NCBI RefSeq assembly: GCF_006345805.1
Contig: NC_043014.1
Coordinates: 33,914,001 to 33,978,000, forward strand
Direction of reading: 5' to 3'
Source of the DNA: Octopus sinensis
Lineage: Eukaryota
Length of the DNA stretch: 64,000 nt
In this document: positions 2,091 through 62,300 of the stretch, piece after piece
How positions within the stretch are numbered: position 1 is the stretch's first letter
Layout: each line of letters opens with the position of its first letter
Translations under genes and position numbers: made by a program
Notes under the pieces: model-generated
What the model was told of the DNA's origin: nothing
Databases searched by the model: none
The model's input: the letters and a program-made list of their open reading frames with translations, nothing else

Positions 2091-2248
2091 GACACTGCAA
2101 GACAGAGATATAGTCACAAACTCACACATAAATAAACAAACACAAACACATGCTACACACATCAGTTCTATAACCATTCTCCAAGCAATAATATTGGTGA
2201 CATTGTTGTAATACAGACAGAATAAACAAAAACTATGGTGGTACTAAC

Positions 2249-2992: not shown

Positions 2993-3459
2993 CTAAGCAA
3001 CAACAAATGTAAAAATATACTTACGACAAATTACATAAACAAAATATAATTCAGACACTTCACGACAATAAAATATAACCGAAACACATTGTAGCAATTA
3101 AATACATCTAAGAGACCCCACAACAACAAAATATAATTAAGACATATTACACAATGTAGCTTGTATTTTTGTTTCAACATCTTGTTTGTTTGCTTTCGCA
3201 TGACAAAGTATCATCCCCATCATCAATCACCATTATTTTAATGTCCACTTTTCCATACTTGCATGGATTGGACTGAGAATGTGTTGAGGCAAATTTTCTA
3301 CAGTTAGATACCCTTCCTGTCAACAACCCATACTTGTTTCCAAGCGAGGCAATATCTTCCAATGGCCAGATATGTTTTCACAGAATACTGAAAATGAATG
3401 ACATTCATTTATGGCAACCACACATTGTCAAGACAAGGTGAAACAAACAAACAAACAAA

Positions 3460-9725: not shown

Positions 9726-12069
9726 AGAATGTACCCCACAACATAGACTGGTAGTTAGTGACTTTAGGATCAGGACTAGGAGGACAACCAGAAGACGACA
9801 AATATGGAGAAGAAGGATCTGGAAGCTTAAAGATCCTGCAAATGGACAGAGATTTAGGGACATATTACTTGAAGCCTCTGACGAAGTAGAAGGGGATAGA
9901 GCATCACAGGGGGTAGAAGACAGCTGGACGTTTCTAAGGGACAACCTGCTGAGAGCCACTGACCAGATCTGTGGCTGGTGCAAAGTCCCCTCTCGACCTA
10001 GAATAACGTGGTGGTGGAACAATATTGTAGACAGGGCTATTAGAGAAAAGAGACAGGCTTGGAAGGTCTGGAAAAATGGGGGTAGCAGGGGATTGTATCA
10101 GACTGCCAAAAGAGAAGCTAGGAGACAGGTTTATTTAGCCAGAGGGGAAGCAGATAAGAAAAAATTTGCCAATGTTCTGCGCCGTGAGGACCAAAGACTG
10201 GAGGTGTTTCGTGTTGCAAGACAGTGTGTGAGAGAGAATCGTGATGTGGTAGGAGAGAAGTGTGTTCGCATGGAAGATGGTTCACTTGCGCTAAATGAGG
10301 ATGCAAAGAGAGAGGTTTGGAGATGCCACTATGAAAGGTTGCTGAATGAAGAAAATGAATGGGATAAAGAGAGTCTGCCGAATGTTGACCCAACAGAGGG
10401 ACCAGCTATCCGAGTTGATAGTTCCGTGGTAGCTAAGGCAATTAGAAGCATGAAGACAGGGAAAGCCCCAGGCCCATCAGGAATCACTGCAGAGATGCTC
10501 AAAATGTCTGGTAGTGTCGGCTATAGCCTAGTCACCCGTATAGTTAATCAGGTGATACACAAAGGGGTCATACCCAATGACTGGTGTAGCAGTATAATAG
10601 TCAACTGCTACAAAGGTAAAGGTGATGCCCTAGATACAAATAACTACAGAGGTATCAAGCTGTTGGACCAGGTGATGAAGGTTACGGAGAGGGTCATAGC
10701 CCAACTAATTAGAGAGAGAGTTAGTTTAGATGAGATGCAGTTTGGGTTTGTGCCAGGGAAAAGTACCACTGATGCTATATTCCTGGTAAGGCAGCTGCAG
10801 GAGAAATACCTAGCCAAAGATAAGCCCCTGTACCTGGCTTCCGTTGACATGGAGAAAGCCTTTGACAGGGTCCCCCGATCCCTTATCTGGTGGTCAATGA
10901 GGAAACTAGGGATAGATGAAAGGCTGGTGAGGGCTGTGCAAGCCATGTACAGAGATGCCGTAAGTAAGGTTAGGGTTGGCAACATGTACACAGAAGAATT
11001 CAAAGTAGAGGTTGGGGTCCACCAGGGTTCAGTACTCAGCCCCCTCCTATTTATCATAGTCCTCCAGGCAATAACGGAGGAATTCAAGACAGGATGCCCT
11101 TGGGAGCTCCTCTATGCTGATGACCTTGCTCTAATTGCTGAGTCGCTATCAGAACTGGAGGAGAAGTTTCAGGTGTGGAAACAAGGATTAGAATCGAAGG
11201 GCCTCAGAGTCAATCTAGCTAAAACCAAAGTCGTAATCAGTAGGAAGGTAGACAAATCACAAACACCTTCAGGTAGATGGCCCTGCTCGATCTGTAGAAA
11301 AGGTGTAGGTAGAAACTCTATAAGATGCACCAAGTGTAAGCTATGGACACATAAGAGATGCAGCAATGTCAAAGGAAGGCTAACTAGGAAGATGGTTTTT
11401 GTATGTGGCAGATGCTCAGGAACAATAAACACTGAAAATGCTCTGAGACCAACTTCCGTCACTTTCCAGGGAGAAAAACTAGAAATAGTTGATAGTTTCC
11501 GTTACCTAGGTGACCAAGTCAGCAGCGGGGGCGGGTGTGCTGAAAGTGTAACTGCTAGAGTAAGAATAGCTTGGGCAAAGTTCAGAGAGCTCTTACCTCT
11601 ACTGGTGACAAAAGGCCTCTCGCACAGAGTGAAAGGCAGACTGTATGATGCGTGTGTACGAACAGCCATGCTACATGGCAGTGAAACATGGGCCGTGACT
11701 GCTGAGGATATGCGTAAGCTTGCTAGAAATGAAGCCAGTATGCTCCGATGGATGTGTAATGCCGGTACTCACACTCGGCAGAGTGTAAGTACCTTGAGAG
11801 AAAAGCTGGACCTAAGAAGCATCAGTTGTGGTGTGCAAGAGAGATGTTTGCGCTGGTATGGTCATGTGGCGAGAATGGATGAAGATAGTTGTGTGAAAAA
11901 GTGCCACACCCTAGCGGTTGAGGGAACCTGTGGAAGAGGCAGACCCAGGAAAACCTGGGACGAGGTGGTGAAGCACGACCTTCGAACTTTAGGTCTCACT
12001 GAGGAAATGACTAGAGACCGAGACCTCTGGAAGTGTGCTGTGCGCGAGAAGACCCGGCAGGACAAGTGA
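9726..12069 (+). CDS. RTE reverse transcriptase ORF, 5'-truncated (RT domain, PHD-type finger, C-terminal region)
   Basis: RT motifs KAPGPSG, NYRGIKLL, QFGF, DMEKAFDRV, GVHQGSVLSP, YADD (11113), FRYLG. The ORF-track start at 9676 is transposon sequence fused in frame. Confidence 0.92.
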
Positions 12070-12675
12070 GTCCATAACCCGTGGCCTTCTACATGGGATG
12101 GAGCCAGCCTACGTATGCATACCTTCCCTTCTTGGGACACAAAACTCTACTTGTGAAGACGTGATGAGGCAAGTGAGGATCAGAATCGAAATCGATCAAT
12201 GGAAATTGCGGATGTGCTACCAGTGCCGGTGGCATGTCAAAACTCTGCTTGTGAAGACCCGTTGAGGCAAGTGACGATCAGAATCGAAATCGATCAATGG
12301 AAATCGATCAATGGAAATTGCAGATGTGTTACCAGTGCCGGTGGCATGTAAGAGAACTTTCCGTTTCGCGACCGTTGCCAGCACCGCCCCGTTTCGTGTC
12401 CGTTGCCAGCCTCGCCTGGCCCTCGTGCCGGTGGCACATAAAAAGCACCATCCGTTCGTGGCCGTTTGCCAGCTCTGTCTGGCACCAGTGTGGGTGGCAC
12501 GTAAAAAGCACCCACTACACTCACGGAGTGGTTGGCGTTAGGAAGGGCATCCAGCCGTAGAAACACTGCCAGATTTGACTGGGCCTGATGAAGCCTTCTG
12601 GCTTCACAGACCCCAGTAGAACCGTCCAACCCATGCTAGCATGGAAAACGGACGCTAAACGATGATGATGATGAT
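9726..12675 (+). mobile_element. RTE-clade LINE, 5'-truncated, with 3' UTR and (GAT)n tail
   Basis: Begins at the end of the APE endonuclease (ECTPQHRLVVSDF); uninterrupted ORF to 12069; long 3' UTR with tandem units; (GAT)5 tail; candidate TSD catcat (9720-9725 / 12679-12684). The Tc1 frame resumes exactly after it. Confidence 0.95.
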
Positions 12676-15820: not shown

Positions 15821-18160
15821 ATATTAATTTGAAATATATATTCCATTTAACAATAGGTACAGACATGGTTAAGCGATAAATATCACTTCAGATATTGAAA
15901 GGCGGTGAACTGGCAGAAAAGTTAGCACGCTGGGCAAAATGCTTAGCGGTATTTTGTCTGTCTTTACATTCTGAGTTCAAATTCTGCCAAGGTTGACTTT
16001 GCCCTTCATCCTTTCAGGGTTGATAAATTAAGTACTAGTTACATACTGGGGTCGATCTAATCAACTGGCCCCCTCCCCAAAAATTTCAGGCCTTGTGCCT
16101 AGAGTAGAAATGAATATCATTTCAGATATCAACTGCTTTGGGGTTCATTCTACTCAACACCATCTTAAAAGCATTTCATTTTTTTACTTATATCAGTCAC
16201 TGAACTGCAGCCATGCTGGGGAAACAACCCAAGTACTTACTTTCTTTCTCCTTTTTTTTTTTCAGCCTGGTACTTATTCTATTGGTCTCTTCTGCCAAGC
16301 CTCTAAATTACAGGGACTGTAACACTAGTTGTCAAATGGTAGGAGAGACAAACACAAAGACATACACACATATACATAGATGTATATATACATATTTTCT
16401 TAGATGTATATATATATATATCATCATCATCATTTAGCGTCCGCTTTCCATGCTAGCATGGGTTGGACGGTTCAACTGGGGTCTATGAAGCCAGAAGGCT
16501 GCATCAGGCCCAGTCTGATCTGGCAGTGTTTCTACGGCTGGATGCCCTTCCTAACGCCAACCACTCCGTGAGTGTAGTGGGTGCTTTTTATGTGCCACCC
16601 GCACAGGTGCCAGACGGAGCTGGCAAACGGCCACGGACGGATGGTGCTTTTTACGTGCCACCGCACCATCACATCTTTCTTTAGATGTATATACATATAT
16701 AATTTTTAAAGAAAGATCTTTTTTGAAGCTATTAACTATTTTTTTTTTATTATTTAATTACATAACGTTTCTTTAGATAGTTAACAACTTCAAAAAATTT
16801 ATTTCTTTAAATATTATGGCAGTGACTGTCTCAGATGATATCATGTGTTTTTGCAAAAACTATATATAGGAAGGGCTCTCACATCATTTCCATCCACCAA
16901 ACTCACTAGGTATTAATCAGCCAAGGGACTGAACTTGAAACTACATAGTTTCAAGTGAGCTTCTTAACTATACAGCCATGCTTACTAACATACTAAGTAG
17001 AGTTGTTGAAAATAATATATTTCAGTGCCTTGTCATGTCCAAGGTCACATGAAAATGAAAATGTTTATTTTGTCAACAATAAATGGTTTCTGGGTCAAAA
17101 AGTGAGTTTTCTCCAACAAAGCAAAACTAAAGTAAAACAATTAACAGGAAAATTCCAGGGAGGAATACTATAAAACATCCAGTGTAATATCATTAATAGT
17201 TTCAGATTTTGCCACAAAGCCAGCAAGTTCAGGTGGGGGTAAGTTAATTACATCAGCCCCAGTGCCCAACTGGTACTTATTTTATTAACCCCCAAAAGGA
17301 TGAAAGGCAAAGATGACCTCCGTGGAATTTAAACTCAGAAAATAAAGACGGACAAAATGTTACTAAGCATTTAGCCCGGCTTGCTAATGATTCTGCAAGC
17401 TCACCACCTTGGAGATAACATCTTTATTCCTAGAAAATTACTATTTTTAAATCTCACAATGTGAGATATTCAGCAACAGTACTTTGGAGTAAAGATTGTT
17501 TGCCAACATACCATGGCAATCCTGGTTTAGGACGAATGTTGCTGTAATTTAGCCCCAGGAGACATCACATATATATATGTGTGTATGTGTGTGTGTGTAT
17601 ATGTTTGTGTGTGTATATGTTTGTGTTCCCCACCCTAACATCGCTTGACAACCGATGCTGTGTGTTTACGTCCCTGTAACTTAGCAGTTCGGCAAAAGAG
17701 ACCGATAGAATAAGTACTAGGCTTACAAAGAATAAGTCCTGGTGTCGATTTGCTCGACTAAAAGGCGGTGCTCCAGCATGGCCACAGTTATATGACTGAA
17801 ACAAGTAAAAGAGTAAACAAGACAACAGAGATCATAATCCTAATAATGTGTACATCAAAAGTTATTTCAAACTAGAATTTAAGTTTAAGATCAGAAATTT
17901 TAAGGAGAGAGGATAGAAAATATCATTGACACAGTTACCTGATTGGCACTGTGTATTTTTATCAACCTCACAATCATGAAAAGCAAAATTGGCTTTAGCA
18001 GGATTTGAACTAAGAACACAAAGAACTAGAACAGTTACTGCAAGGCATTTTGTCTGATGTTCTAAAGTTTCTGCCAATCTAATCTCTGCAAAGGGAAGAA
18101 GAAAAATAATGTCTAAATAACAATGGAAAACAACAAAGGTAAAATAAATGACTATATTAC

Positions 18161-18401: not shown

Positions 18402-19896
18402 CATACATACATATATATTGAAAAATACAAATAAGATGATAATTTATTTTCAAACACGGAAACGCTGTTAGAACAGCAGAAATATTGGGTAAATTGCCCT
18501 TACAAAGAGGAAAAATTTGTCAACAACCAGCCATGAGACTTGAACCCACATTCCTTGAAGACTCTGGCCAAGTGCTTTACCATTAAGCTAAACTGCCAGC
18601 TGACAAATCAATCTGCAATTTTAGATGCTATATAGACAAATGTACAACTACATGTATATAAATATAAACAAACTAACTTTTTTTATAAGCAGGCAGTTTG
18701 GCTTAATGGTAAAGCACTTGATCAGCGTTTTCAAGGAGTGTGGGTTCAAGTCCAATGGCTGGTTGTTGACAAATTTTTCTGCAAATTTTAGTAGGAATTT
18801 TATGGCTAGATACCCTTCCTATATACACACACACGTATGTATGTATACACACATATATATATATGTATACACATATATGCATATACATATATATTTTTAT
18901 ATCCTGGTGTTGGATAAATAATTTAATGAAGCAGGGGAAAGAAGTATTTATACGAGGCACTGTTACTGGTACACAAGGTTAAATTAAACACTTTCTGCCA
19001 ACAGCTCACAGTGAACTGCTTACCCCTGAACTTCTGACAGTGCTTTATTTTATAGCAATGTGCCAGTCCTCTTTCAATCATTTGTGGGTGGTCAGAATCT
19101 TTCCACATCTCCCCTTTTGAGAATTAAACTCCACTCAAAGTTTTAATATCTCTTACACTTAGGGTTCAATTCCAGTGTTTCCATTCTTTTCTGTTTTCTG
19201 GTGCTAAAATGTATAGTTTCAAACTATTTGGATGTTGGTACCTCAAACATGTCATGCAATACTTCCATAGGGATTTCATATCTCATGACTGATTTTTCTG
19301 TGAATCTTTTTTCAAGTTGGTTAATGTCTTTTATGTTTGACATTTTTTTCCTTTTACCAGGAATAACATTCTTCCAATTTATTAAATAAATATATTGTCC
19401 TCCCAGCTTTCTTTACCATACTTATAGGTTTTAAGAAAAATTTTGTCACCTAACTTGAAGCATTTTGAAATATTTTTATTGTTCACCAGGGAGAGAAAAT
19501 AGAAAAAGGTATAGTGGCTAGCGATCTATCATAGCAATCTAACCACTTTACAGCAATATGTATACTGGTACTTAGTATGGACCAACATTAGTGAGGTTGC
19601 CTTACACCACTAGACTCGCTTTCCATCAACATGCGCTATTGCTTGGATGGTGGACTCTTCATATATATATATGCATGTATATCCTCATCACCATATTGTG
19701 TCTGTGTGAGTGTAAAAGAGTTTATATATAAATATGACTAAATGCATATATCTGATTCTACACATGCATGTGTGTGTTTGTGTGTGTGTAGTATTTAAAA
19801 AAAATCATATCAGAGGTTCACAACACATATAAAGGATACAGCAGAATTGAAACCTTTTCTAAAATGCATATGTCATAAAATATATGTGGAAAAAAT

Positions 19897-33308: not shown

Positions 33309-33514
33309 AGCATATATATATATATAATATAATTAGAGGATAAAATCATTAAAATTAATGAATTTCATCAGTGGTTACTGTATAAAAACCTTTCAAGTAA
33401 AATACATTTATGAAGATATATAATTATGTAGTGGGAATATATATTCAGTACCAGGTGTTGATATGGCTGCGTGTATATTATTACAAGAGTACATACAGAG
33501 ATGAAGAATAAATT

Positions 33515-33772
33515 CTAAACTTTGCCCAAGCAATTCTTATTCTAATGGTAACACTCTCTGAGCATCTACCTCCACTACTAACTTGGTCACCTAGGTAGCA
33601 GAAGCTATCAACTACTTCTAGTTTCTTCCCCTGGAGTGTGATCGAATCTGTTTTCTGAGCACCTGTGGTGTTTATTGCCCCTGTGCATCTGCCGCACATG
33701 AAAGCTATCTTCCCAACTAATCTTCTTTTGATATTGCTGCACCTCTTATGTGTCCATAGCTTAAACTGGGTA
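33515..33772 (-). mobile_element. Degenerate RTE LINE fragment
   Basis: CGRCTGAIN...LEVVDSFCYLGDQVSSGG...RIAWAKFR, highly similar to the ORF at 11400-11585. Confidence 0.85.
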
Positions 33773-34244
33773 ATATATTCATACTATATATACATATATA
33801 TACACACACACAAGTGGTCAAGGGTCTTTTAATATAACCCCACACCAACTAATGCCTTTCAAGTGGAATTGGTATACAGAAACTGTACAGAAGCCTGTGG
33901 CATGCGTGTGTGTGGAGGGTATGATAGGTTACCTTCGGTTTCTGCCTATAAATCCTCTCACAAGGCTTTGGTCAGCCCAGCTCTGTAGTAGAAGACACAT
34001 GCCAATGGGGCCATGCCATGAGACTGAAATCGAAATGATATGGTTGGGAGAGAAACTTTTTAACCACACAGCTCACACACACAAACACACTTATTCTTTT
34101 ACTGGTTTCATTCACTCAACTGTGATCACACTGAGGTGCTGTTACTGTTTTTTTTTTTAAATCTATTTTTTTTATTCCTTATAGCATGGTTCAGATGAAA
34201 CTTTGTTACACCAATGGATTATATTTTTCTGGTAATCTCCCTTC

Positions 34245-37534: not shown

Positions 37535-37908
37535 ATCATCATCATCATCATCATCATCGTTTAACGTCCGTTTCCCACGCTAGCATGGGTTGGACGGTTC
37601 GACCAGGGTCTGGGAAGCCAGGGGCTGCACCAGGCTCCACTCTGATCTGGCAGTGTTTCTACAGCTGGATGCCCTTCCTAACACCAACCACTCTGCGAGT
37701 GTAGTGGGTGCTTTTTATGTGCCACCGGCACAGGTGCCAGGGGAGTCTGGCATCGGCCACGACTGGTTGGTGCTTTTAACTTGCCACCGGCACGGAAGCC
37801 AGTCAAGGCGGCGCTGGCATCAGCCACGTTCGGATGGTGCTTTTTATGTGCCACCAGCACAGAAGCCAGTCGAGGCGACGCTGGTATCGGCCAGGTTCGG
37901 ATGGTGCT
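37535..37908 (-). mobile_element. RTE 3'-UTR-derived short copy (representative of many, e.g. 16424, 29650, 32030, 36485, 39210, 44880, 47158)
   Basis: Reverse complement of the LINE 3' UTR and (GAT)n tail. Confidence 0.8.
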
Positions 37909-37933
37909 TTATATATATATAATATATATATAT

Positions 37934-40833: not shown

Positions 40834-41097
40834 TACTGAAGAAGATCTGTTTTGTTCTTGAAATTATCTTTTACTTGTTTCTGCCATTGGACTGTGGCCA
40901 TGCTGGAGTACTGCCTTCGAGTGTTTTAAGTGAACAGATTGATCCCAGTACTTATTTTTTAAGTCTGATACTTATGCTATTGTTCTCTTCTGCCAAACTG
41001 TTAAACTACAAGAATGTAAGCAAAACAACACTGGCTCCCAAGCAGTGGAGAGTAGGACAAACACAGTCACAAACACACATGCATATATATATATATA

Positions 41098-41713
41098 CGG
41101 TAACACGTAAAAGCACCGTCCGTTCGAGGCCGTTTGTCAGCTCTGTCTGGCAACCGTGTCGGTGGCACGTAAAAGCACCATCCGTTCGCGTCCGTTGCCA
41201 GCCTCAGCTGGCCCCCGTGCCGGTGACACGTAAAAGCACCGTCCATTCGTGGCCGTTTGCCAGCTCTGTCTGGCCCCGTGTCGGTGGCACGTAAAAGCAC
41301 CATCCGTTCGTGTTCGTTGTCAGCCTCGGCTGGCCCCCGTGCCGGTGACACGTAAAAGCACCGTCCGTTCGTGGCCGTTTGCCAGCTCTGTCTGGCCCCG
41401 TGTCGGTGGCACATAAAAGCACCATCCGTTTGTGTCCGTTGCCAGCATCGCCTGGCCCCGTGCCGGTGACACATAAAAGCACCATCCGTTCGTGGCCATT
41501 CGCCAGCTCTGTCTGGCACCTGTGCAGGTGGCACGTAAAAAACACCCACTACACTCGCGGAGTGGTTGGCGTTAGGAAGGGCATCCAGCCGTAGAAATAC
41601 TGCCAGATCTGACTGAGCCTGACGAAGCCTTCCAGCTTCACAGACCCCAGTTGACCCGTCCAACCCATGCTAGCATGGAAAGCGGACGCTAAATGATGAT
41701 GATGATGATGATG
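41098..41713 (+). mobile_element. RTE 3'-UTR copy with an expanded 61-bp tandem array
   Basis: aaaagcacc units at 41109, 41171, 41232, 41293, 41354, 41415, 41475, then the common ...ccatgctagcatggaaagcggacgctaaa(tga)n end. Confidence 0.85.
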
Positions 41714-44346: not shown

Positions 44347-47300
44347 TATGCATGTGTTCAAAATGATATGTTTATACAAAACAAATTCCATAAAAACAAT
44401 GTGTTGACATTTTTTTTTTCCTTTTTTAATAAGTATGCATGCTTGTCAATTTTGTTACAAATACCAACCATATTCTGCAATATTTTTACTCTTTCTTCCT
44501 CCACCACCCTCTCACTTCTCTCACTCTGGTTTGCCTCTGCCTACTCTCCTCTCTATTACCCTCTTGCTCTAGTTCTCTTTCTTCACTCTCTCTTGTCACA
44601 GATGAGACAACCCGCTATTAATGGTGAGCAACAAATGGAGACAACACAGGCAAGAAAGAAGTCTTTAATCTTACAGCAGATTAAACAGCCTTTCTAGTAT
44701 TGGTACCATAATAAACTGCACCCAGTACACTCTGTAAACTGTGTACTGACAAATGAACAAACTAGTGTAGAAAAGGCTTTTAGCCTTGCTCAGAATATGA
44801 TAATCTCCCTGGTTTTGGTGCTGCAATAAACTGCGCCCAGTATACTTAGTATTTCAGTTGGCAATAGAAAGATGTGCCAGAAAGGGAATGTATAAACAAG
44901 ATGCATTCCCTAGGAGACCTATTGAGTCAAGTACATCAACATCTAAATAAATACCAAATGGAAATTGTAGTTGTGATACCTGTGCTGGTGGCACTTAAAA
45001 AGCACCATCCAAACATAGCCGATGCCAGCGCAGCCTTGACTGGCTTCTGTGCTGGTGGCACGTAAAAAGCACCAACTGATCGTGGCCGCTGCCAGCCTTC
45101 CCTGGCACCTATGCCGGTGGCACATAAAGAGCACCCACTACACTCACAGAGTGGCTGACGTTAGAAAGGGTATCCAGCTGTAGAAACACTGCCAGATCAG
45201 ACTGGAGCCTGGTGCAGCCTCCTGGCTTCCCAGACCCCGGTCGAACCGTCCAACCCATGCTAGCACAGAAAACGGATGTTAAACGATGATGATGATGATG
45301 ACCATAATAACCTAGTCAACCCATTGCCAGCATGGAAAAAAACAACATGGAACGAGGATGAGGACAACAATGATACACATCATCATCATCATTATTTTAA
45401 TATCTACTTTTCCATGCTTGCATGAATCAGATAAGAGTACACTGGAGCAGAGTTTTCTATGGCTGGATACCCTTCCTGTTGCCAACCCCACCCAACTGTT
45501 TCCAAGCAAGTACCAATACTAGAAAGGCTGTTTTGTCTGCTGTAAGATTAAAGACTTCTTTCTTGTCTGTGTTGTCTCCATTTGTTGCTCACCATTACTA
45601 GAGGATTGTCTCATCTGTGACAAGAGAGATGAGTTTGAGTGGAGAACTAGAGACACATGGCATCTTTATGAAGAAGCTTTTTGTTTACAAAGATTGTAAA
45701 ATATGTCAAGACATGTCAAGAAGCCCAGATATGCTTTGACAGCTGCCTGCAAGCAGATGACACCATCAGCTAAGCTATTAAGTGCAACCAGCAAGTGAAT
45801 GCATGTGTGAAGTTGAGAAAAGTACAAACTTCTCTCTCAACACACTTCTCACACAAACACACTTCTTTCTCTCTCACACACACACAGTCACAAACACACA
45901 CATGATTTCATGTTCAATCTCTGTGGGATTGTACCTGAAATCGTGTGGTTGGGAAATGAACTTCTTAACCACTCAGCCATGCCTATACATAGTCTCCAAC
46001 ATAATATGCCAGAAAAGAAGACAAATCGTTCATGCACAAAAGTGGTTGCACCAAACAGTGACATGACTCAGCTTTTTTCATTCTATCAAACAGAGAATTA
46101 GCAGAATTGAAGACAACACTACACTTACAATCAAAAGGCGTAGGAGTGGCTATGTGGTAAGTAGCTTGCTTACCAACCACATAGTTCCAGGTTCAGTCCC
46201 ACTGCATGGCTCCTTGGGCAAGTGTTTTCCACTATAGCCTCGGGCCAACCAAAGTCTTGTGAGTGGATTTGGTAGACGGAAACTGAAAGAAGCCCACCGT
46301 ATATATGTATATATGTGTGTGTGTGTGTGTGTGTGTTTTTGTCTGTGTTTGTCCCCACAAAATCGCTTGACAACCGATGGTGATGTGTTTACGTCCCCGT
46401 AACTTTGCAGTTCAGCGAAAGAGGCCGATAGAATAAGTACTAGGCTTACAAAGAATAAGTCCTGGGGTCGATTTGCTCGACTAAAGGCGGTGCTCCAGCA
46501 TGGCCACAGTCACACGACTGAAACAAGTAAAAGAGTACTTTCATCTTCAATTCTGCCCACCTCTGACACCAGCAGGAATAAGGTAATCATCATCATCATG
46601 GTTTTAATGTACACTCTTCCATACTTGCATGGTCCAGACAGAGTTTACTGAGGCAGAGGTTGTATATAGCTGGATGTCCTTCCAGTCACCAACACTCACC
46701 TGTTTCCAAGCAAGGTAATATTTTCCCTATGCCCAGACATGGATGCCCTTCCAAGAGTATAGTGGGTGCTTTTACATGCCACTGGCATGAGGGCCAGTCA
46801 GACGGTACTGGCAATAGCCACGCTCAAAAGATGTTTTTTTATGTGCCACCTGCACAGGAGCCACTCCAGCAGCACTGGCAATGACTTCACTTAAATGTTG
46901 TCTTTCACGTGCCACCAGCACAAGTGCCAGTAAGGTGACACTGGTAACAATCACGCTCAAATGGTGCTTTTTACGTGCCATCGGCATGGGAGCCAGTCAG
47001 CGGCCCTGGCAGTGATCATGTTTGGATGGTGTTCTTAGCGTTCCACTAGCACGCCAGTCTGATTTATAGACAATACATATCCATATATACAAGTCTCTTC
47101 AAGGTTTTGGTTCAAAAGACAGATGAAATTTCATATAAAAGGAATACATATATATCAACATCATCATCATCATTTAGCGTCCGCTTTCCATGCTAGCATG
47201 GGTTGGACGGTTCAACTGGGGTCTGGGAAGCCAGAAGGCTGCACCAGGCCCAGTCTGATATAGCAATGTTTCTACGGCTGGATGCCCTTCCTAACGCCAA

Positions 47301-47593
47301 CCACTCCATGAGTGTAGTGGGTGCTTTTTACGTGCCACCAGCACAGGTGCCAGACAGGGCTGATGAACGGCCTATATATATATATATATGATGAGCTTCT
47401 TTCGGTTTCTATTTACCAAGTTTACATGCAAGGGTTTGGTCAGCCCAGGGCTATAATAGAAGACACTTGCCCAAAATGTCATACAGCGAGACTGAACTTG
47501 AAACCATGTGGTCAGGAAGCAAACTTCTTAGCCACACAGCGACACCTGCACTTATAGATGCAAAAATAAGAAAAAAGAAACTAAATTTAATAC

Positions 47594-47783
47594 CTGAGGA
47601 ACAGAAGATTCTTGAGCCAAACCAACAATCTGACCTATGTTGTCATCTGAAGAACTGTCAGCCTGCCTTGGAGATGCAACCTCACTGTCAGAATCTAGCC
47701 ACCAAAATTCCTTCCCTCTGGATGTGTGACTGACGCGTTGTGTTCTGCTCTGTGGTTCACCATAGCGGAACCGAGAAATATAT
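47594..47783 (-). CDS. PROSER3: PROSER3-like exon (YISRFRYGEPQSRTQR...EFWWLDSDS...SSVPQ)
   Basis: Acceptor ttttcccccccag|A, donor CAG|gtatta, 190 nt, phase 2 to 0. RFRYGEPQSR plus FWWL is the recalled PROSER3 N-terminal signature. Confidence 0.85.
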
Positions 47784-48316: not shown

Positions 48317-48393
48317 CTTGACAAAACAGAACCACGCAAAACGGTATCTTCATCATCAAGAGCAGATTCTTCATCTTTTTCTTCATCAAACAT
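48317..48393 (-). CDS. PROSER3: PROSER3-like gene, putative first coding exon (MFDEEKDEESALDDEDTVLRGSVLS-R)
   Basis: Minus strand ...ctaat...ttaag/cag|G ATG TTT (tandem NAGNAG acceptor at 48397/48394); donor TCAAG|gtaact at 48317, phase 2. Splicing to the next exon gives SVLSRYISRFRYGEPQSR, matching the recalled PROSER3 N-terminal motif (SVxAKYIxRFR). ATG as the true start is inference. Confidence 0.75.
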
Positions 48394-49471
48394 CCTGCTT
48401 AAATGTCCGGTTTGATTAGATCATCTGGAGCATGTTCTCAAATGTCTGTAAAGAAAATTACCAACAGGATCACACATACAAAGTAGAGTCAAACCAAAGT
48501 AGAGATAACCACAAGCGCGTACAAAGCAATCGGTATGTAGGAGGAGCTGGTTCAAAACCAGTTTGATACAAAAGTTTCTAACACCAGATGAAAATGTCCT
48601 TGAATAAAACAGATAAATCAATTTCAACAAAGCATCAATAAGTGATATTGTTAAAACACTATCATTCTGACAAAAGGGAAACAGGACATAGCTAACTAAC
48701 TGGCACTCTGTCAATTATGACAATGAGTGTTCCAGCTGATCCAATCAATGGAACGGGCTTTACGTTCTTAGTTCAAATTCCGCCGAGGTCGACTTTGCCT
48801 TTCATCCTTTCAGGGTCGATAAATTAAGTACCAGTTACACACTGGGGTCGATGTGATCGACTTAATCCCTTTGTCTGTCTTTCTTTGTCCCCTCTATGTT
48901 TAGCCCCTTGTGGGTAATAAAGAAATAAGAAACTGTGGGACCACATGGAGCAGCACCCTGTGACTCCTATAGTAGGCACAACCAAAAGCCCTAGGGGACG
49001 ACCTAGATAGATAGATACAATATTTAGTTTTTGGTAAATGAAGGAGTTTGATGGTAAGTTCAATTCCATGGCATGGCATCTTAGGCAGGTGTGTTCTGTT
49101 CTAGATATGGGCTGGCCATAGCCTTGAGAGTAGATTTGGTAAACAGAAACTGAAAAATGCCCATTGTCTGTGTGTGTGTGTGCATGCGCACATGTGTGTT
49201 TGTGTATCACTGTCTTTTTGCCTTGATATCATTTGATAATTGTAAATGAATGTCTCCATCATGCAAGCAGTGTTCTTCATTCCCAACTCTTCTGTTTCTC
49301 ACCATGGGGAAATATTACCTTATTTGGAAACAGGTGAGGGCTGGTGGCTAGATTGGTATCTGGCAGCACAAAACCCATCTCAACAAAATTCTGTCTGACC
49401 CATAGAAAAATGAATGCTAAAATGATGATGATGATGATAATGATATATACATCCATCCATACATACATTAT

Positions 49472-49513
<42 letters not shown>

Positions 49514-49561
49514 TATACAGATATGTAAACATGTATATATAAACAAATATATATATGTGTT

Positions 49562-49596
<35 letters not shown>

Positions 49597-49612
49597 ACAG
49601 ATATGTATACAC

Positions 49613-49668
<56 letters not shown>

Positions 49669-50870
49669 CATACATAGAGAGAGAGAGCTATATATAGGTA
49701 AATATAAACATATATACATATATACATACACATATATGTATATAGATATACACACATACATATATATGTACATATATTTTTATCTTTTATGCTGGAGTAC
49801 TAGCTTGAAGGCTTTTAATCAAATGAATTGAACCCAGTACTTATTTATAAGCTTGGTACTTATAACCAACACCTGTTATCAAACGGTGGTGTCGTCGACC
49901 CAGGGCTAAAGTAGAAGACACTTGTTTAAGGCGCCACTCAATGGAAATGAACCTGGAACCATGTGATTATAAACACATTCAACCCAAGCAAATTGTGTAA
50001 AATAGACAAAATGTTTTTAAAATCTTGACTGTAACAATCGGAAGGAAAACGTAAAAACGCGAAAAGCAACTGATATCAGAAAGTGAACGAAACAGTGCAA
50101 GGGAGATAACTCTAAATAACTGATCGAGATCTTTTGGAAATGATACTATTACGAGATCACACATTTACAGGACATCGTACGATGAACCAACGATAGAACC
50201 TTTGCATGGACGATCGAGTTGCTAGAAATAGCAGCTAAAACACCTTTTAATCACACCCCACCATCTAAAATATGGAAGAGAACGCACTGGCTGACATAGT
50301 TTTATATATACACACGCAAGCATGTATCTGTCTTATACACTGTTCGCTGTCCAGACATTTGTACATTACTGCACATACTTTATATGCACTTTTTGACAAG
50401 TTGTGGTGCACCTGAGCACTGTATACAATAATTTCATTATTATTTTTTTTTTTTTTTAAAGTACAATTGCTCTTGGCTGAAATGTCTTTACAAAAAGGTT
50501 TGCTTAATCAAGTTTGATCCAACAACTATGTGACATTAAATATTTCTTTCAAATATTACAATATTTAATTCCGTAATATTGTCGACATGTATATTGCATT
50601 GATTACGATACCAATGAAGAGCAGATTCTTCACATTCTCCCCCAATCTTCATTCAAAATGTTAAGACAAAAGGAAGGAGAAACAAAATATAGATTCTCCT
50701 TCTCAAGTCTTTGCCAGCTTCTTAAAGTTTTCCATGCAACTGCCTTGAAATTAAACTCTCATTTTCAGTAAATCTGAACACCCCCCCCCCACAGACACAC
50801 ACACACACATACACCCAATGAGTCAGGCATATTACACTGTGTAATACAATTTTTGTTCATGAGTGGCAAC

Positions 50871-51245
50871 TGTTATTTCCTTTTTGTTTACCCCCAGAAA
50901 GGATGAAAAATGGCTAATATTTCCTTCAAACTTTGCTTACCTCCAACTTTTCTCCACTTGGACAGCAAGAAGTAAAATGAATAGTTGAGCATATGGTCCC
51001 TGTATTTATACAGCCAGCTATGTTGCCAGAATGTTCTAGAAATTCTTGAAACTTTTCGAAAGTTCTTGAAACTTCTAGAAAGTCCTAGAAAATTCTGCTT
51101 CAGCAACTGAGAGCTGAATCTGTCTGAAATGTAATGGAAACTAATTCAGTTTGAAAACATTGATGTACAGGTCACAAAAGCATAGTTTGAAGGGAATAGC
51201 AGTCATTTCCTTTGATTTCTACATAGAAGCAAAGAGGAAATAACA
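50871..51245 (-). mobile_element. Solo-LTR-like element (375 bp, TGTT...AACA)
   Basis: Ends are an 11-bp inverted repeat (tgttatttcct / aggaaataaca) and there is an internal TATA, as expected of an LTR. No target-site duplication (flanks gcaac / tttac) and no canonical AATAAA. Confidence 0.5.
50941..51096 (-). promoter_or_regulatory. Heat-shock-type core promoter: HSE array, TATAAATA, Inr and a 38-nt candidate non-coding first exon
   Basis: Alternating nGAAn/nTTCn pentamers at 51028-51096; TATAAATA on minus at 51010-51003; TCATTT Inr with A at 50978 (32 nt from the first T of the TATA); donor GGAG|gtaagc at 50941. Confidence 0.6.
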
Positions 51246-54200
51246 TTTACTGACCAAAGACAAAAAATTTTAATTTTTTTACACGGTGTTATTAATCTAA
51301 CTTAATTTCTGTTTGGTCGTTTCAATAGCTCAAAATAACAGCCAAATCTTTCTCAAACCACACCCTGTGATCTTTAAAAAGGAATGATACGTTAGATGTA
51401 GTTTTAGACAAAGTTTGAATGAAGCAAAAATTGATGAGCTGAAACCTCTTTGATCAGTCTGTTGGATAAGAGCTGAGTTGGGGTTAAACACCACCAACTA
51501 CCATTTACATGGTTGCTTGTCCTGTTAGCAGCCAAATTTTTCTCAATTACACCTTACCATACCGTTAGATCTGAAAATTTAAAAAAAAATCAGGATGCTC
51601 ACAAATGGAATGTTAGTGTGTTTAGGTTCCCGTAACTTAGCGGTTCAGCAAAAGAAACTGATGGAATAAGTACTAGGCTTACAAAAAATAAGTCCGGGAA
51701 TCGATTTGATGTTCCAGCATGGTCGCAGTCAAATGACTGAAACAAATAAAAGAATAGAAGAAAAAATACAGAACTGAAAGTAAAATAACTCAAAATCTAT
51801 ATTCATTACAGACCATTTATCGTTTCTTCAACATTGAAATTATGTCCATCTTCGTCGAAATTAGAATTCAGAATATAATCCATTTTCACTTAACAAAACA
51901 CACTGAAATAGATAATTAAAAATATTTTGTACCAATTAGAATATATGGAGGTTTTTGTTGGGGTGGGGTATGTGTAAAAATACCTCATTTTATACTGACT
52001 TTTAAAATTAATCTAGAAATTTACGTGGGAAGGGAGACAACTTGTAATACGAGACATTTCTGATCAGTTTTTTTTTTTTTTGTTCTTCCCTTTTTCCAAG
52101 CAATAAATGAACATACTTATACAGCTAATTATATTAGACGTTTATCATTACTTCGACAAATGCGATGATGGTTGTGTTTTGTTAATTATGAAGGAGTTGC
52201 TGAAAGACAAAAATCATTAACTAATATTGGCTTTGTTTTTCTTTCCTTCTCAAAATATACTTTTATTATTAATTCCAGTTCATATCCTTTAATGTCCCAT
52301 GCATTAAAGTGTGCTAATAACAAACCTAAAATATAATAGATATCTACAGTATGAAAGAGAAAGTCAACGTCATAGGATCAACGGTACTCGAGTTGTCTCC
52401 CTTGAATCAGACCTCGCTCCTTCATATCATGGTTGATGAATTTCCCTTTGGCTTACTAACATTTAAATTTAAGAAAACAAAAACCATTCCAGGAAGAAGT
52501 AGCATGTAGATAATCTTTTCTACTCTAAGCACAAGGTCCGAAATTTTGGGGAAGGAGGCTAGTCGATTAGATCGAGCCAGTATGCAACTGGTACTTAATT
52601 TATCGACCCTGAAAGGATGAAAGGCAAAGTTGACCTCTGCGGAATTTGAACTCAGAACGTAAAGATAGACGAAATACCTATTTCTATTTCTTTACTACCC
52701 ACAAGGGGCTAAACACAGAGAGGACAAACGGATTAAGTCGATTATATCGACCCCAGTGCGTAACTGGTACTTAATTAACCCCGAAAGTATGAAAGGCAAA
52801 GTCGACATCGGCAGAATTTGAACATAACGGCAGACGAAATACAGCTACGCATTTCGCCCGGCGTGCCAACGTTTCTGCCAGCTCGCCACCTTAAGTAGTA
52901 TGTAAATAATGTAAAAATAATGTACTGAATGTTTTTGAACTGAAGATTTCAAAGCTAGTAATCCAATAGGGACTCCACTCAGCCATTGTATAATATATTC
53001 ATTCTGTTTTTTTGCTGTCTTAATTAACTTTAGAAAATGATGATGATGATTATGTGTATCTGTTATTTATCTGTGTTCAAATCACTATCAATTTCTAGAG
53101 TCTTAAATACCGAATGTATCTCTTTCTTTAAATGCGTAGTCTTCTGCCCTAATACCAAATTAGCATCATTGACTGTCCAATATTTCTTAGTATTATTGAC
53201 TGTCCAATGTTTCTTAAATGTCAAAATGACACAGGAGAAAGGAGATTCACACCTTAAATGTCAAAATGACATCAGGGGAAGAGGGACTCAAATCAAATTC
53301 ATTAATATTAGCATAATAATCACATTACTGAATACTGGGCCTTTGAATTCACTTGTTTTAATTTCTTGTTCATAATATCCACTATTTTCCTCCAAACTTC
53401 CATATTCTGCTGTGATATTAAACTTATATGCAGACTGATATTTGTTTCAAGTTTTAGCACAAGGCCGGCAATTTTAGGGAGAGGGGATAAATCAATTACA
53501 TAGTTGCTAGTGCTCAACTGATATTAATTTTATCAACCCTGAGAGGATTAAAGGCAAAAACCTCAGTGGGATTTGAACCCAGAATGTAAAGAACCAGAAG
53601 AAATGCTGTTAAGCATTTGGTCCTACATGCTAACACTTCTACCAGCTTGCTGCCTTACAGGTACACTGGTGTTAAACTGCATACACTACATTGATATCAA
53701 ACCAAATATGCCACACATTGATATCAAATGGCATATCCAACCATATACAACAGACTAGTATTAAACCATCTATGGCCATATTGATATTAAAATATATCGT
53801 GTGATCACATGACTGATCAGGCAGTCAGATGTTGTTACACATCACTGAGTACAATGCGTTTATGCATTGTTTTAGCTTTCAAATGATGCTACCCCACTTG
53901 CTAGGCAAGCAGGCCAACATTCCCCACTGACCGAAAGGAGGACTAGAGCAAAGTAAAATCAAGTGTCTTGGTCAACAATACAACACACCACCCAATCAGG
54001 GAATTGAACCCACAATCTAGCAATCATGAGTGCAACAGCCTAACCACTAGGCAATGTGCCTTCACTATATACCATACTAATATTAACTAAATATGAATAC
54101 ACAGATATGTCCCAAGCACATAATTTCAGGTTCAGTCCCACAGCATGGCACTGTGAACAAGTGTCTTCTACAATAGCCCCAGGCCAACCAAAGCCTTGTG

Positions 54201-59345: not shown

Positions 59346-62300
59346 TGAAGAACATAAAAGCCACATTCATACTAGTAGTCATCTCTGCAACACACATCAA
59401 TTGAAAACCTTCACATCCAGCTGCTCTCTCAACTCAACTGGACATGGTGCCCAGTTCTCCCAACCATGTTAAACTACACTTCTTCAACATGATTTACAAA
59501 CAGGGATTCAGTTCCCTGAATTTCTTCCATCTTTTATTTTAACCAAACTTTCTTCTACTTTCAAGCCTGGTCTATCTGTTTGAGCATTTGTGAACGTTTA
59601 TCAGATGTGGTGGTTGTAGTATTCAGTTTTCCATTCCAGTTTACAATTCTTTTAATACTTTCTGATCATTAATAATTTGTCTTTGCTGGTTAATTTGATT
59701 ACTTTTTCCTGCAAGAGGACAAACTTGTTTATCTGGGTAAAAGCTGAATTATTTGATTCACTGTCATACCAACGTTAAGTATATTTTATAGAGTAAAAAA
59801 CCCACTAGAGCTGTAGTTTAGCCAGTTCGAATTTATATGGAACCAATGGACTAAGATGAGTAGCAGAAACCTTGTATGTACCCAGCATTTATTTGTCCTT
59901 TCCCCCATTCGATAAGCTCAGAATTCAGCATCCTAAAGTGACAAGATTTTAAGAATGAATGCTTGTATTCTTTATTACTTTAGCATCAAACATGCACCTG
60001 ATACAGCTACCAAGTAACCTTACTTTGGAACCATCCAGACCGCTGGTAGAGGGTTGTTACTGCCTAAATGCCATTTAGACCATTCTTGGTCTAAATGCTA
60101 TTTTAGAAATTTCAGAAACAGCTGATACCTCTAACACTGAACCTTGAGATCACTCTACCTACACACTCAGACTAACCGCTATTGATGAAGGAATACACAA
60201 ACAAGCACCTATACATCCTTAATAGTAAGACAAAAATGTACTTAAAGGCATTTTTTAAAGCTTACGATTAACAGATGCGTTCTCTATGCTTGACGGTCCA
60301 TACACACTCCACCTAACTTCCCTTACAAGAATGAATGAAGAATGTCAACAAACTTTTGAAGCCACTTCGAAGAGTGGGTGAGAGTAAAGCTTTACTTAAG
60401 CTGCACATCCATGAAAACGAGTTTTGGTACTTAACGAGTTGAATGTGTACGTTCTGAAACTGCATGTGTACACTTTGAAGTCCAGCATTACATTTCCAAG
60501 TGGCATGTCTACACTCTGAAGTTGAGTATGTATCTACTGAAGCAGCATGTGTACACACCTGTAGTCGCATGTGTACGTATTGAAATCGAGTATGCACACT
60601 AATGTTGCTTCTGTATATTTTGATTTGTCCCAGGCGCATTCTAAAATCGAGAGTTCATACTCTATATTCGATTGTTTTCACAAAAAAGTCCATCTCATTA
60701 TTTATCTTTTAAAATGTGTTTCTATAATTCTTTTTTAAATACTCATTAGTAGCGTGATCTCTGCAGATTAGAGATGAATCAACAAGTTTCTGATGCATTC
60801 AATTAGCTACTTTCGTTTATTTACCCAGTATGATTAATACATCTAGCTTTAAAAATTCGGCTATCTAAATGTGTATTCATTTGTTTTGTTTTACGGCAGA
60901 GTCTAGCTGGCAGAAACGTTAGCGCGCCGGGCGAAATGCTTAGCAGTATTTCGTCTGTTGTTACGTTCTGAGTTCAAATTCCGCCGAGGTCGACTTTGCC
61001 TTCCATAAATAAAGTACCCGTTTCGCACTGGGGTCTATGTAATCGACTTAATCCCTTTGTCTGTCCTTGTTTGTCCTCTTTTATGTTTAGCTCCTTGTGG
61101 GCAGTAAAGAAATATATCTTAATCATTCTGATGTGTATATTTGTTAATTAGCATTATATGAAAACTCGTTGTTAAAATACAATACAGCAGAAGTTATGGA
61201 ATTCCCTTATCCGTATCGGATCGTACTAATGCGATATAATCATTCATGCTTTAATAAACTCTTTAACATGGAAATTCCACCACAATATTCCGTGATCTAG
61301 CTTCACCAAGCACGCAACTAACAAGTTAAAACATGTTTACTGTTGCTAAAAGAAATAAAAGAAAAAGGAATCTTTTTTTATATATTAATTTAGCGATTAT
61401 AAGAACTTACTTATAAAAATTTTGTTCCTTTTCTCTCTTAACTGATCGATTGACCGTGCTTAGAAAGTAATCTTATCAAATCAGTACAAATATATACAGT
61501 CAGAAATATTTTTAAATTCGCGTATTTCGTGCGCCATGAACTTTTCTTGGAGAAAGTAGTAGTTACAAAAGTCGAAATGTGAGCGCTGGAAAAAAAAACA
61601 TAAAGCAGTACAGGAACGATACGAAACGAAAGATTTTTTTATTTTTTAGGTAATATCGTTTCTGAAATAGCAATGTAAACAGCGTTGTTATTATTATTAT
61701 TTAACCCCAGATATGTTCTAACAGAGCAAACCTATAATCAAAATAATTCCAGTTATAATCATTCCATCTTTTTAAGAGTATCTAAAACTAATACAGTCTA
61801 AAGTATATATTTTTTATAAGACGATAGGGCATGATTTGAGGGAGATTTGGCTTCTATTTCTGACAGGGCGAGTAATCATGTAAAGGTTCCCTCATTGTCA
61901 TTGTTAAATAAGCTACTGAGATCTCGACGAGCTGAAAATGCGACCTGACTTAAGAATGAAGCTAATTAACTAATGCTCTTCAGAAAGGATTGATGGTTAA
62001 TTCATTGATTCATTCACATTTTTATACATTTGTAGTTTTTTTATAAGTCGAAATATTGATTTTGTGATTTGTTTCCAGAAACATAATATCTAAGGTTTAA
62101 AACATGTAATTCAGAAAGAAAATCTTTTCGAAAAATATCAGAAAATGTTACGCATAATTTAAACAAAAGTGAGCTGAGAGTGGCCAGTGGCATGTATTTG
62201 AACAACATAGACAAATGCGGGTATATCAAATACCATACAACATAAATTCTTGATTTTTTTTTTTTTTATGTTTCAATTACCTCCAACTTGACATTTATCA

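What the first reader, a model, noticed from the sequence alone, without database searches (positions are those of the whole stretch)
50871..51245. Complete heat-shock promoter module inside a solo-LTR-like element, aimed at the PROSER3-like gene
Read on the minus strand the sequence gives, in order: 11 in-phase alternating nGAAn/nTTCn pentamers (51042-51096, 9 perfect) plus 3 more after a 1-bp shift; a 17-bp spacer; TATAAATA; a TCATTT initiator 32 nt on; 38 ATG-free nt; and a strong GGAG|gtaagc donor. Alternating nGAAn arrays are the established HSF1 site, and HSE-TATA-Inr is the hsp70-type layout. The next strong acceptor found precedes the putative start (cag|G ATG at 48394). The module sits within 375 bp bounded by 11-bp TGTT...AACA inverted repeats. 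Inference: a retrotransposon LTR co-opted as a heat-inducible first exon for a non-chaperone gene, and possibly a dispersed HSF-responsive element family.
Basis: partly seen in the sequence, partly recalled or inferred. Interest (0 to 1): 0.85.

Follow-up and report, generated by a model that had tools for sequence, protein, structure and literature searches.

The report
Heat-shock promoter inside octopus gene intron
A textbook-looking heat-shock promoter sits inside the first intron of an octopus PROSER3-family gene and points at it, so it may switch on an extra heat-induced transcript, but nothing shows that it came from a retrotransposon and its use is untested.

Summary
On the minus strand: 11 in-phase nGAAn/nTTCn units (9 perfect) plus 3 after a 1-bp deletion, a 17-nt spacer, TATAAATA, an initiator 32 nt on, a 38-nt ATG-free leader and GGAG|GTAAGC. 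This is far beyond chance.

The window is Octopus sinensis.

The solo-LTR reading is not supported:
- There is no target-site duplication and no poly(A) signal.
- There is no second copy in about 94 kb of local sequence.
- The inverted repeat (really about 71 bp at 72%) is matched or beaten in 16% of control chunks.

The array is 3.2 copies of a 20-bp unit, so local tandem duplication explains it.

The module is absent from the orthologous Argonauta hians locus. A unique non-coding block conserved with Argonauta, ending in a conserved GTAAGT donor at 61411, is probably the gene's ancestral first exon and promoter. The module therefore lies 10.4 kb inside a 13-kb 5'UTR intron.

Best reading: a lineage-specific, HSF-driven alternative promoter or intronic enhancer. 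Its function is untested.

The parts
51042..51096 (-). Main HSE array: 11 in-phase alternating nGAAn/nTTCn pentamers, 9 perfect
   Evidence: Read. The run finder gives (51042, 51096, 11 units, 9 perfect). Trimer hits.
51028..51042 (-). Three more perfect HSE units, shifted by a 1-bp deletion
   Evidence: One search gives (51028, 51042, 3, 3). TRF array 51028-51096, period 10 x 7.0 and period 20 x 3.2.
51003..51010 (-). TATA box TATAAATA, 17 nt downstream of the last HSE unit
   Evidence: TATAAATA occurs 0.20 times per kb per strand in the window.
50975..50980 (-). Initiator-like TCATTT (fits YYANWYY); putative +1 A at 50978, 32 nt from the start of the TATA box
   Evidence: Inferred transcription start, not measured.
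50941..50978 (-). Putative non-coding alternative first exon: 38 nt, no ATG
   Evidence: One search prints the 38-nt leader with no ATG. Inferred.
50935..50943 (-). 5' splice site GAG|GTAAGC (GT at 50940-50939)
   Evidence: It sits at the inner edge of the right inverted-repeat arm.
51178..51248 (.).
   Evidence: 71 bp, 72% to the other arm. 1 of 300 simulations reach the score, but 28 of 177 real chunks do.
50868..50938 (.). Right arm of the imperfect inverted repeat; 50867-50909 also resembles part of a SINE family that is frequent in the window
   Evidence: The SINE resemblance is 81% over 43 bp to 3941-3979 and 17267-17305 (family D18). Marginal.
48445..48445 (-). Best candidate acceptor for the first coding exon (ttttctttacag|ACATTTG); gives a 52-nt 5'UTR containing a 5-codon uORF
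   Evidence: score 18.75, rank 7 of 126. Sequence.
48394..48394 (-).
   Evidence: score 10, rank 77 of 126.
48317..48393 (-). First coding exon of LOC115221445 (ATG at 48393-48391; MFDEEKDEES...)
   Evidence: tblastn of XP_036366753.1 is 100%. The protein was found and named.
47594..47783 (-). Second coding exon (residues 26/27-89, YISRFRYGEPQ...EFWWLDSDSE...)
   Evidence: 100% identity.
61411..61590 (-). Unique non-coding block conserved with Argonauta hians, ending in a conserved |GTAAGT donor: probable ancestral 5'UTR exon 1 and core promoter of the gene
   Evidence: blastn gives 68% over about 190-210 bp. The block is collinear and single-copy in both loci. Alignment, sequence.

Best explanation
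The module is a lineage-specific heat-shock-type promoter. It lies, in sense orientation, in the roughly 13-kb first (5'UTR) intron of the Octopus sinensis PROSER3-family gene LOC115221445, 2.6 kb upstream of the start codon.

Its 14-unit HSE array grew by local tandem duplication of a 20-bp (four-pentamer) unit. The array could hold several HSF trimers 17 bp upstream of a TATA box.

On heat or proteotoxic stress, HSF would recruit the transcription machinery to start at about 50978. The 38-nt ATG-free leader would be spliced from GAG|GTAAGC to the acceptor of the first coding exon, most likely 48445. The result would be a heat-inducible mRNA with an alternative 5'UTR and the same protein. The array could equally act as an intronic heat-responsive enhancer on the conserved upstream promoter near 61.5 kb.

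Shown: the sequence anatomy, its statistical rarity, the identity and exon structure of the gene, absence from Argonauta, and the conserved upstream exon candidate.

Inferred: HSF binding, the start site, use of the donor and acceptor, and heat induction.

A transposon origin is neither needed nor supported.
For: - HSE array of 11+3 units, against a maximum of 6 in 200 simulations. It is a 20-bp unit repeated 3.2 times.
- TATA, initiator, ATG-free leader and donor co-occur only once in 128 kb of strand, and that is next to the array.
- Gene identity, orientation and ATG at 48393. PROSER3 Pfam hit.
- No protein-domain remnant between the donor and the first coding exon, so there is no nested chaperone gene or pseudogene to serve instead (ORFs).
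- Strong acceptor at 48445 just upstream of the ATG.
- The Argonauta ortholog locus has no HSE trimer in 26 kb, so the module is a derived feature.
- NCBI lists four accessions for isoform X1 alone, which is compatible with alternative UTR exons.
- Established knowledge: HSF trimers bind three or more inverted nGAAn units, and multimerised HSEs in front of a minimal TATA promoter are sufficient for heat induction. The artificial HSE promoters used in fish are recalled from memory, not from a tool.
Against: - There are no expression, CAGE or HSF-binding data.
- A conserved candidate first exon and promoter lies 10.4 kb further upstream, so the gene does not need this module.
- Six cryptic acceptors that score higher than 48445 on the same crude score lie between the donor and the coding exon, so transcripts from the module may end in non-productive products.
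- Conservation in close relatives (O. vulgaris, O. bimaculoides) could not be checked.
- The array is a minisatellite in a genome full of tandem repeats, so it may be young and neutral.
Confidence: 0.45

Rival explanations
1. One reading: the 375 bp is a solo LTR (or another mobile cassette, such as a MITE with ~70-bp terminal inverted repeats). It carried its own HSF-responsive promoter and was co-opted, and may be one of a dispersed family.
For: - TG...CA termini with an 11-bp perfect inverted repeat, which extends to 71 bp at 72%.
- The donor lies exactly at the inner edge of the right arm.
- The module is absent from Argonauta.
- TE-borne HSEs are a known phenomenon: Helitrons in Caenorhabditis (PMC6927752); ONSEN in Arabidopsis (from memory).
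Against: - No target-site duplication of 3-10 bp at or within 12 bp of either end.
- No AATAAA or ATTAAA in the element.
- No other copy of the element or its termini in the window plus L003, about 94 kb, where the common SINE families have 5-8 copies each.
- The surrounding 1.6 kb is uniformly single-copy, with no break at the proposed ends.
- An inverted repeat this strong occurs in 16% of control chunks.
- A pseudo-protein search for other copies found nothing, and a metagenome scan for the arms found nothing. Both are weak negatives.
Confidence: 0.12
2. A non-functional accident: a palindromic 10/20-bp minisatellite that happens to spell HSEs, next to an AT-rich stretch that happens to look like a core promoter. 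It is either not transcribed, or it gives only unstable intronic transcripts that never join the gene.
For: - The array is a tandem repeat in a genome dense with micro- and minisatellites.
- It is not conserved in Argonauta.
- The gene has a conserved upstream first-exon candidate.
- Many cryptic acceptors lie downstream.
- The features were selected post hoc by a reader.
Against: - The joint core-promoter and donor pattern occurs once in 128 kb of strand, and it sits 17 nt from the only long HSE array, in the sense orientation of the host gene.
- 12 of 14 units keep a perfect GAA/TTC core despite unit-to-unit differences elsewhere.
- HSE multimers in front of a TATA box are known to be sufficient for heat induction (established knowledge).
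Confidence: 0.3
3. A relic of a duplicated heat-shock-gene 5' end (promoter, non-coding exon 1 and donor of an hsp70- or hsp90-type gene). It landed in this intron and its coding part is lost or was never copied.
For: The HSE-TATA-initiator layout with a short non-coding exon and donor is the layout of chaperone genes that have 5'UTR introns (general knowledge). The module is absent from Argonauta.
Against: - No chaperone or other Pfam remnant in the three sense frames of 48400-50945.
- No long ORFs there.
- Octopus HSP gene promoters could not be fetched for comparison.
Confidence: 0.08

Closest known systems
Canonical HSF-dependent heat-shock promoters (hsp70 type) and synthetic multimerised-HSE/minimal-TATA promoters
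   Same: Contiguous inverted nGAAn units directly (17 bp) upstream of a TATA box, with an initiator about 30 nt further on and a short leader.
   Different: - It has 14 contiguous units in one uninterrupted array, built from a 20-bp tandem repeat. Natural promoters usually have several separate 3-6-unit HSEs.
- It sits inside an intron of a non-chaperone gene.
- Activity is untested.
Transposon-borne HSEs that rewire heat-shock regulons: Helitrons in Caenorhabditis (PMC6927752); ONSEN/Copia78 LTRs in Arabidopsis (from memory); HSF sites in Drosophila TEs (PMC6649756)
   Same: A lineage-specific HSE cluster placed next to a non-chaperone gene, potentially conferring heat inducibility.
   Different: No hallmark of a mobile element was met here: no target-site duplication, no other copy in about 94 kb, no coding or LTR partner. 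Local tandem duplication accounts for the array.
Vertebrate PROSER3, which shares a promoter region with the small heat-shock gene HSPB6 (PMC10876707)
   Same: A PROSER3-family gene physically coupled to heat-shock-type regulatory DNA.
   Different: - In octopods the divergent neighbour is porphobilinogen deaminase, not a small HSP (Argonauta).
- No small-HSP ORF was found in the 12.7 kb upstream of the module.
- The coupling is probably coincidental.

Membership tests
HSF-dependent heat-shock promoter | At least three contiguous, alternately oriented nGAAn units | tested here: met
   11 in-phase units (9 perfect) plus 3 perfect units.
HSF-dependent heat-shock promoter | Core promoter (TATA at about -30, initiator) immediately downstream of the HSEs | tested here: met
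   TATAAATA 17 nt after the array and an initiator A 32 nt after the start of the TATA box. The joint pattern is unique in the window.
HSF-dependent heat-shock promoter | HSF occupancy and heat-induced transcription initiation | not testable with these tools
   No expression or binding data are reachable. The literature search for the locus found nothing.
Solo LTR of an LTR retrotransposon | TG...CA termini with a short inverted repeat | tested here: met
   TGTTATTTCCT ... AGGAAATAACA. However, these are part of a 71-bp imperfect inverted repeat.
Solo LTR of an LTR retrotransposon | 4-6 bp target-site duplication flanking the element | tested here: not met
   No direct repeat at the ends. Only trivial 3-4-mers appear at shifted offsets.
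Solo LTR of an LTR retrotransposon | Polyadenylation signal downstream of the start site within the LTR (R/U5) | tested here: not met
   No AATAAA or ATTAAA anywhere in 50871-51245 on the minus strand.
Solo LTR of an LTR retrotransposon | Other copies, including full-length elements with two LTRs and gag-pol | tested here: inconclusive
   None in the window or in L003, about 94 kb together. A genome-wide search is not possible with these tools.
MITE / TIR DNA transposon | Terminal inverted repeats clearly above genome background | tested here: inconclusive
   71 bp at 72%. 1 of 300 simulations reach the score, but 28 of 177 real chunks have one as strong.
MITE / TIR DNA transposon | Target-site duplication and multiple copies | tested here: not met
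   No target-site duplication. Single copy in about 94 kb.
PROSER3 protein family (downstream gene) | Significant match to Pfam PF27936 | tested here: met
   A precomputed unmarked hit (E at most 1e-5) is on record for both the O. sinensis and the A. hians products. The local Pfam copy returned no family, possibly because it does not hold that model; I did not check this. NCBI names the protein 'uncharacterized'.

The most novel reading that the evidence does not exclude
The module is one copy of a low-copy, mobile promoter cassette in Octopus genomes: HSE array, TATA box and splice donor between ~70-bp inverted repeats. Such a cassette would hand heat inducibility, complete with a ready-made first exon, to whatever gene it lands in. 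The PROSER3-family gene would be one recruit to an octopus-specific extension of the heat-shock regulon.
Probability: 0.08. Interest if true: 0.7.

Novelty: new member of a known kind. Interest (0 to 1): 0.35.

Why it matters
If it is active, this is a clean natural example of a complete heat-shock promoter and first exon arising inside an intron, apparently by tandem duplication of a four-pentamer seed. It would put a poorly understood non-chaperone gene (PROSER3 family) under stress control in octopuses, animals whose thermal tolerance is of ecological interest.

It would also be a compact (~160 bp) endogenous heat-inducible promoter candidate for cephalopod transgenesis.

If it is inactive, it is a useful caution that perfect-looking promoter modules can arise as minisatellite by-products.

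Tried and rejected
1. Second copies in the window. blastn of 50700-51400 against the window gave only microsatellite hits, a marginal SINE-like hit and the internal inverted repeat. A tile scan shows 50000-51600 is single-copy.

2. Pseudo-protein trick. I searched the 72-aa ORF that spans the array, TATA box and exon for called ORFs in other assemblies. There were no candidates. This is a weak negative.

3. Protein searches. The 274-aa exon found only one Logan contig, a genomic orthologous exon from a relative at 83% nucleotide identity. The spliced N-terminus found nothing in the word-indexed search. The exhaustive HMMER search did find the annotated protein.

4. O. vulgaris (P0005) and isoform X2 (P0002) loci are not on record, so close-relative conservation could not be tested.

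5. Metagenome scan for the two-arm pattern: 0 hits.

6. Small HSP or other chaperone nearby. None in ORFs of 51-64 kb on either strand. None as a Pfam remnant in the sense frames of 48.4-50.9 kb. HMBS, the divergent neighbour in Argonauta, was not found in the window by tblastx.

7. Literature. There is nothing on this locus or on cephalopod HSEs.

8. The idea that the array derives from the SINE segment GGAATTTGAACTCAGAAC was considered and dropped. The only SINE similarity the search supported is the 43 bp in the right arm. I compared the array to that SINE segment only by eye.

9. Rfam found only two borderline tRNA-like hits elsewhere. ARAGORN did not confirm them.

Full report
**What is in the sequence**

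- Positions 51096-51042 hold 11 in-phase alternating nGAAn/nTTCn pentamers. Nine have a perfect GAA/TTC core; the exceptions are aGGAc and aAAAg.
- A 1-bp deletion is followed by three more perfect units down to 51028.
- A 17-nt spacer (51027-51011) comes next, then TATAAATA (51010-51003).
- TCATTT follows, with its A at 50978, 32 nt from the first T of the TATA box.
- After that come a 38-nt leader without ATG (50978-50941) and GGAG|GTAAGC (GT at 50940-50939).
- The 375-bp interval begins with TGTTATTTCCT and ends with AGGAAATAACA.

**Is it more than chance?**

A run finder recovers exactly (51042-51096, 11 units, 9 perfect) and (51028-51042, 3 units). The next-best run in the real window has 4 units. 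The maximum over 200 first-order Markov simulations of 64 kb is 6.

I then scanned both strands of the window for a joint pattern: TATAAA, an initiator (YYANWYY) with its A 28-34 nt downstream, an ATG-free leader, and a GGTRAG donor within 20-125 nt. It occurs once, at 51010(-), 17 nt from the only long HSE array. The pattern was defined after seeing the case. Even so, co-location by accident is unlikely.

Tandem Repeats Finder shows the array is 3.2 copies of a 20-bp unit, or 7 copies of a 10-bp unit. The array therefore most simply grew by local tandem duplication of a four-pentamer seed.

**Organism and gene**

The window has the look of a cephalopod genome: GC about 36%, dense SINEs and many microsatellites.

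The candidate exon at 47782-47594 was searched against 1.84 billion representative proteins. It hit a 698-aa protein at 100% identity over residues 27-89. That protein is XP_036366753.1, 'uncharacterized protein LOC115221445 isoform X2' of Octopus sinensis. The cluster also holds isoform X1 (709 aa, four accessions) and an O. vulgaris protein.

The N-terminus I had spliced by hand equals residues 1-89 of that protein. It uses the ATG at 48393, a donor after 48317 and an acceptor before 47783. tblastn places ten coding exons in the window, from 48393 down to 2249 on the minus strand.

The O. sinensis locus fetched by protein look-up (L003) is identical to the window where I compared them. That covers the first coding exon region, the HSE hits and the core-promoter 32-mer.

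Both the Octopus product and its Argonauta hians ortholog carry a precomputed Pfam PF27936 'PROSER3' hit. The ortholog is GAB1601939.1, 43% identical over 566 residues, E = 3e-113. The local Pfam copy returned no family, possibly because it does not hold that model; I did not check this.

**Is it a solo LTR or another mobile element?**

The tests I could run do not support this.
- No direct repeat of 3-10 bp flanks the proposed ends, even allowing ±12 bp of slack.
- The element has no AATAAA or ATTAAA.
- The 11-bp termini are the best-preserved part of an ungapped 71-bp inverted repeat at 72% identity, 51178-51248 against 50868-50938. That is a TIR-like feature, not an LTR-like one.
- The repeat is also not exceptional. 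Only 1 of 300 simulations reach its score, but 28 of 177 real 701-bp chunks of the same window hold a dust-masked inverted repeat at least as strong.
- Part of the right arm (50867-50909) resembles a SINE segment common in the window, at 81% over 43 bp. The arms may therefore be old repeat debris.
- The 1.6 kb from 50000 to 51600 is uniformly single-copy in the window, with no change at the proposed ends. Flanking SINE fragments have 5-8 matches each.
- Neither the core promoter nor the terminal motif occurs a second time in the 88-kb L003 locus, which adds about 30 kb beyond the window.
- A search with the pseudo-protein spanning the module and a metagenome scan for the two arms found nothing. 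Both are weak negatives.
- A genome-wide copy count, which is the decisive test, cannot be made with these tools.

**Comparative evidence**

The Argonauta hians locus (L002, 26 kb) holds the orthologous gene in 6.3 kb, against 68 kb in Octopus. Porphobilinogen deaminase lies divergently 2 kb upstream. The locus has no GAAnnTTCnnGAA trimer anywhere, so the module is a derived feature of the Octopus lineage, or was lost in Argonauta.

Outside coding exons and SINEs, one block aligns between the two loci. L002 8863-9053 matches window 61380-61590 at 68% identity, and the block is collinear and single-copy in both. The alignment ends in a conserved AA|GTAAGTTCT in the orientation of the gene, and the block contains conserved CpG-bearing motifs such as TGGCGCAC. 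It has no conserved ORF.

I read this block as the ancestral non-coding first exon and core promoter, with the exon ending at 61411 in Octopus and at 9040 in Argonauta. On that reading:
- The 5'UTR intron is about 950 bp in Argonauta and about 13 kb in Octopus.
- The HSE module lies 10.4 kb inside it.

This is inference from conservation, not from transcripts.

**What the module would drive**

There is no long ORF and no Pfam remnant in the three sense frames between the donor and the first coding exon. A nested or decayed chaperone gene is therefore unlikely. No small HSP is visible in the 12.7 kb upstream.

I scored acceptors by polypyrimidine content, YAG and an AG-exclusion penalty.
- The gene's authenticated acceptors score 14.5-22.5.
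- The site ttttctttacag|A at 48445 scores 18.75. It would give a 52-nt 5'UTR with a five-codon uORF.
- Six cryptic sites between the module and 48445 score higher than it.

The statement that the 48394 site is 'the next strong acceptor' is therefore not right. A good acceptor for the coding exon does exist.

**Mechanism proposed**

HSF trimers bind three or more inverted nGAAn units. Multimerised HSEs in front of a minimal TATA promoter are sufficient for tight heat induction. Both points are established knowledge, recalled rather than retrieved.

The module has that architecture in the sense orientation of a real gene, with a consensus donor 38 nt after the putative start. The most likely function is a heat-inducible alternative promoter and first exon that does not change the protein. 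Failing that, it could be an intronic heat-responsive enhancer for the conserved upstream promoter.

My probabilities for the readings:

| Reading | Probability |
|---|---|
| Heat-inducible alternative promoter or intronic enhancer | 0.45 |
| Non-functional minisatellite accident, or a source of dead-end intronic transcripts | 0.30 |
| Mobile-element origin (LTR or MITE) | 0.12 |
| Relic of a duplicated HSP gene 5' end | 0.08 |

**Comparison with what is known**

- The module works like an hsp70-type promoter and like synthetic HSE multimers.
- As a lineage-specific HSE cluster beside a non-chaperone gene, it parallels the Helitron-borne HSEs of Caenorhabditis (PMC6927752), HSF sites in Drosophila TEs (PMC6649756) and ONSEN in Arabidopsis (from memory). 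It fails the tests for being inside a mobile element.
- In humans, PROSER3 shares its promoter region with the small heat-shock gene HSPB6 (PMC10876707). In octopods the divergent neighbour is HMBS, so I treat this as coincidence.

**Verdict**

It is a new member of a known kind. Interest is moderate to low until transcripts or HSF binding are shown.

Noticed in passing
window 61380-61590 (-); L002 8863-9053: A unique non-coding block conserved at 68% between Octopus sinensis and Argonauta hians. It ends in a conserved GTAAGT donor in the gene's orientation and holds CpG-bearing motifs (TGGCGCAC, E2F-like). It is probably the ancestral 5'UTR exon and promoter of the PROSER3-family gene.
   Followed up: partly
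window 2249-48393 (-) and beyond the window start; L002 10001-16278: The same gene spans about 68 kb in O. sinensis and 6.3 kb in Argonauta hians. In the window its introns are dense with SINEs, microsatellites and a LINE.
   Followed up: partly
window 9676-12069 (+): An intact 797-aa ORF with a reverse-transcriptase domain (RVT_1, E = 5e-32) followed by a weak PHD/C1-like zinc-finger match. It is a LINE-type retroelement copy inside an intron of the gene, antisense to it. A degraded relative lies at 33484-33783.
   Followed up: partly
window 18525-18597 (-) and 18692-18764 (+): Two borderline Rfam tRNA hits (32 and 31 bits) in inverted orientation, within a ~270-bp palindrome just upstream of the coding exon at 18349-18158. 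ARAGORN calls no tRNA there. They are probably tRNA-derived SINE heads.
   Followed up: partly
window 48393-48445 (-): If the strong acceptor at 48445 is used, the 5'UTR holds a five-codon upstream ORF (ATG CTC CAG ATG ATC TAA) ending 26 nt before the main ATG.
   Followed up: no
window ~2600-2700 (-), exon at 2992-2249: The genomic exon encodes a tandem 11-residue duplication (…ARLNGTPHEPSARLNGTPHGPS…). It is present in isoform X1 (709 aa) and skipped in X2 (698 aa). The isoform difference is therefore an in-exon repeat unit, not a separate exon.
   Followed up: partly
L001 (Logan SRR11869391, 932 bp) against window 2224-3137: A genomic contig from an unidentified relative is 83% identical across the large exon and also its flanking intron. 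Coding and non-coding parts look similarly diverged there.
   Followed up: no
window 40975-41669 (-) and 12297-12635, 37590-37922, 47203-47391: Copies of one abundant repeat family give long spurious ORFs (…DGSTGVCEARRLHQAQSDLAVFLRLDALPNANHS…). The 41-kb copy carries an internal tandem expansion that raises local GC to 45%.
   Followed up: no
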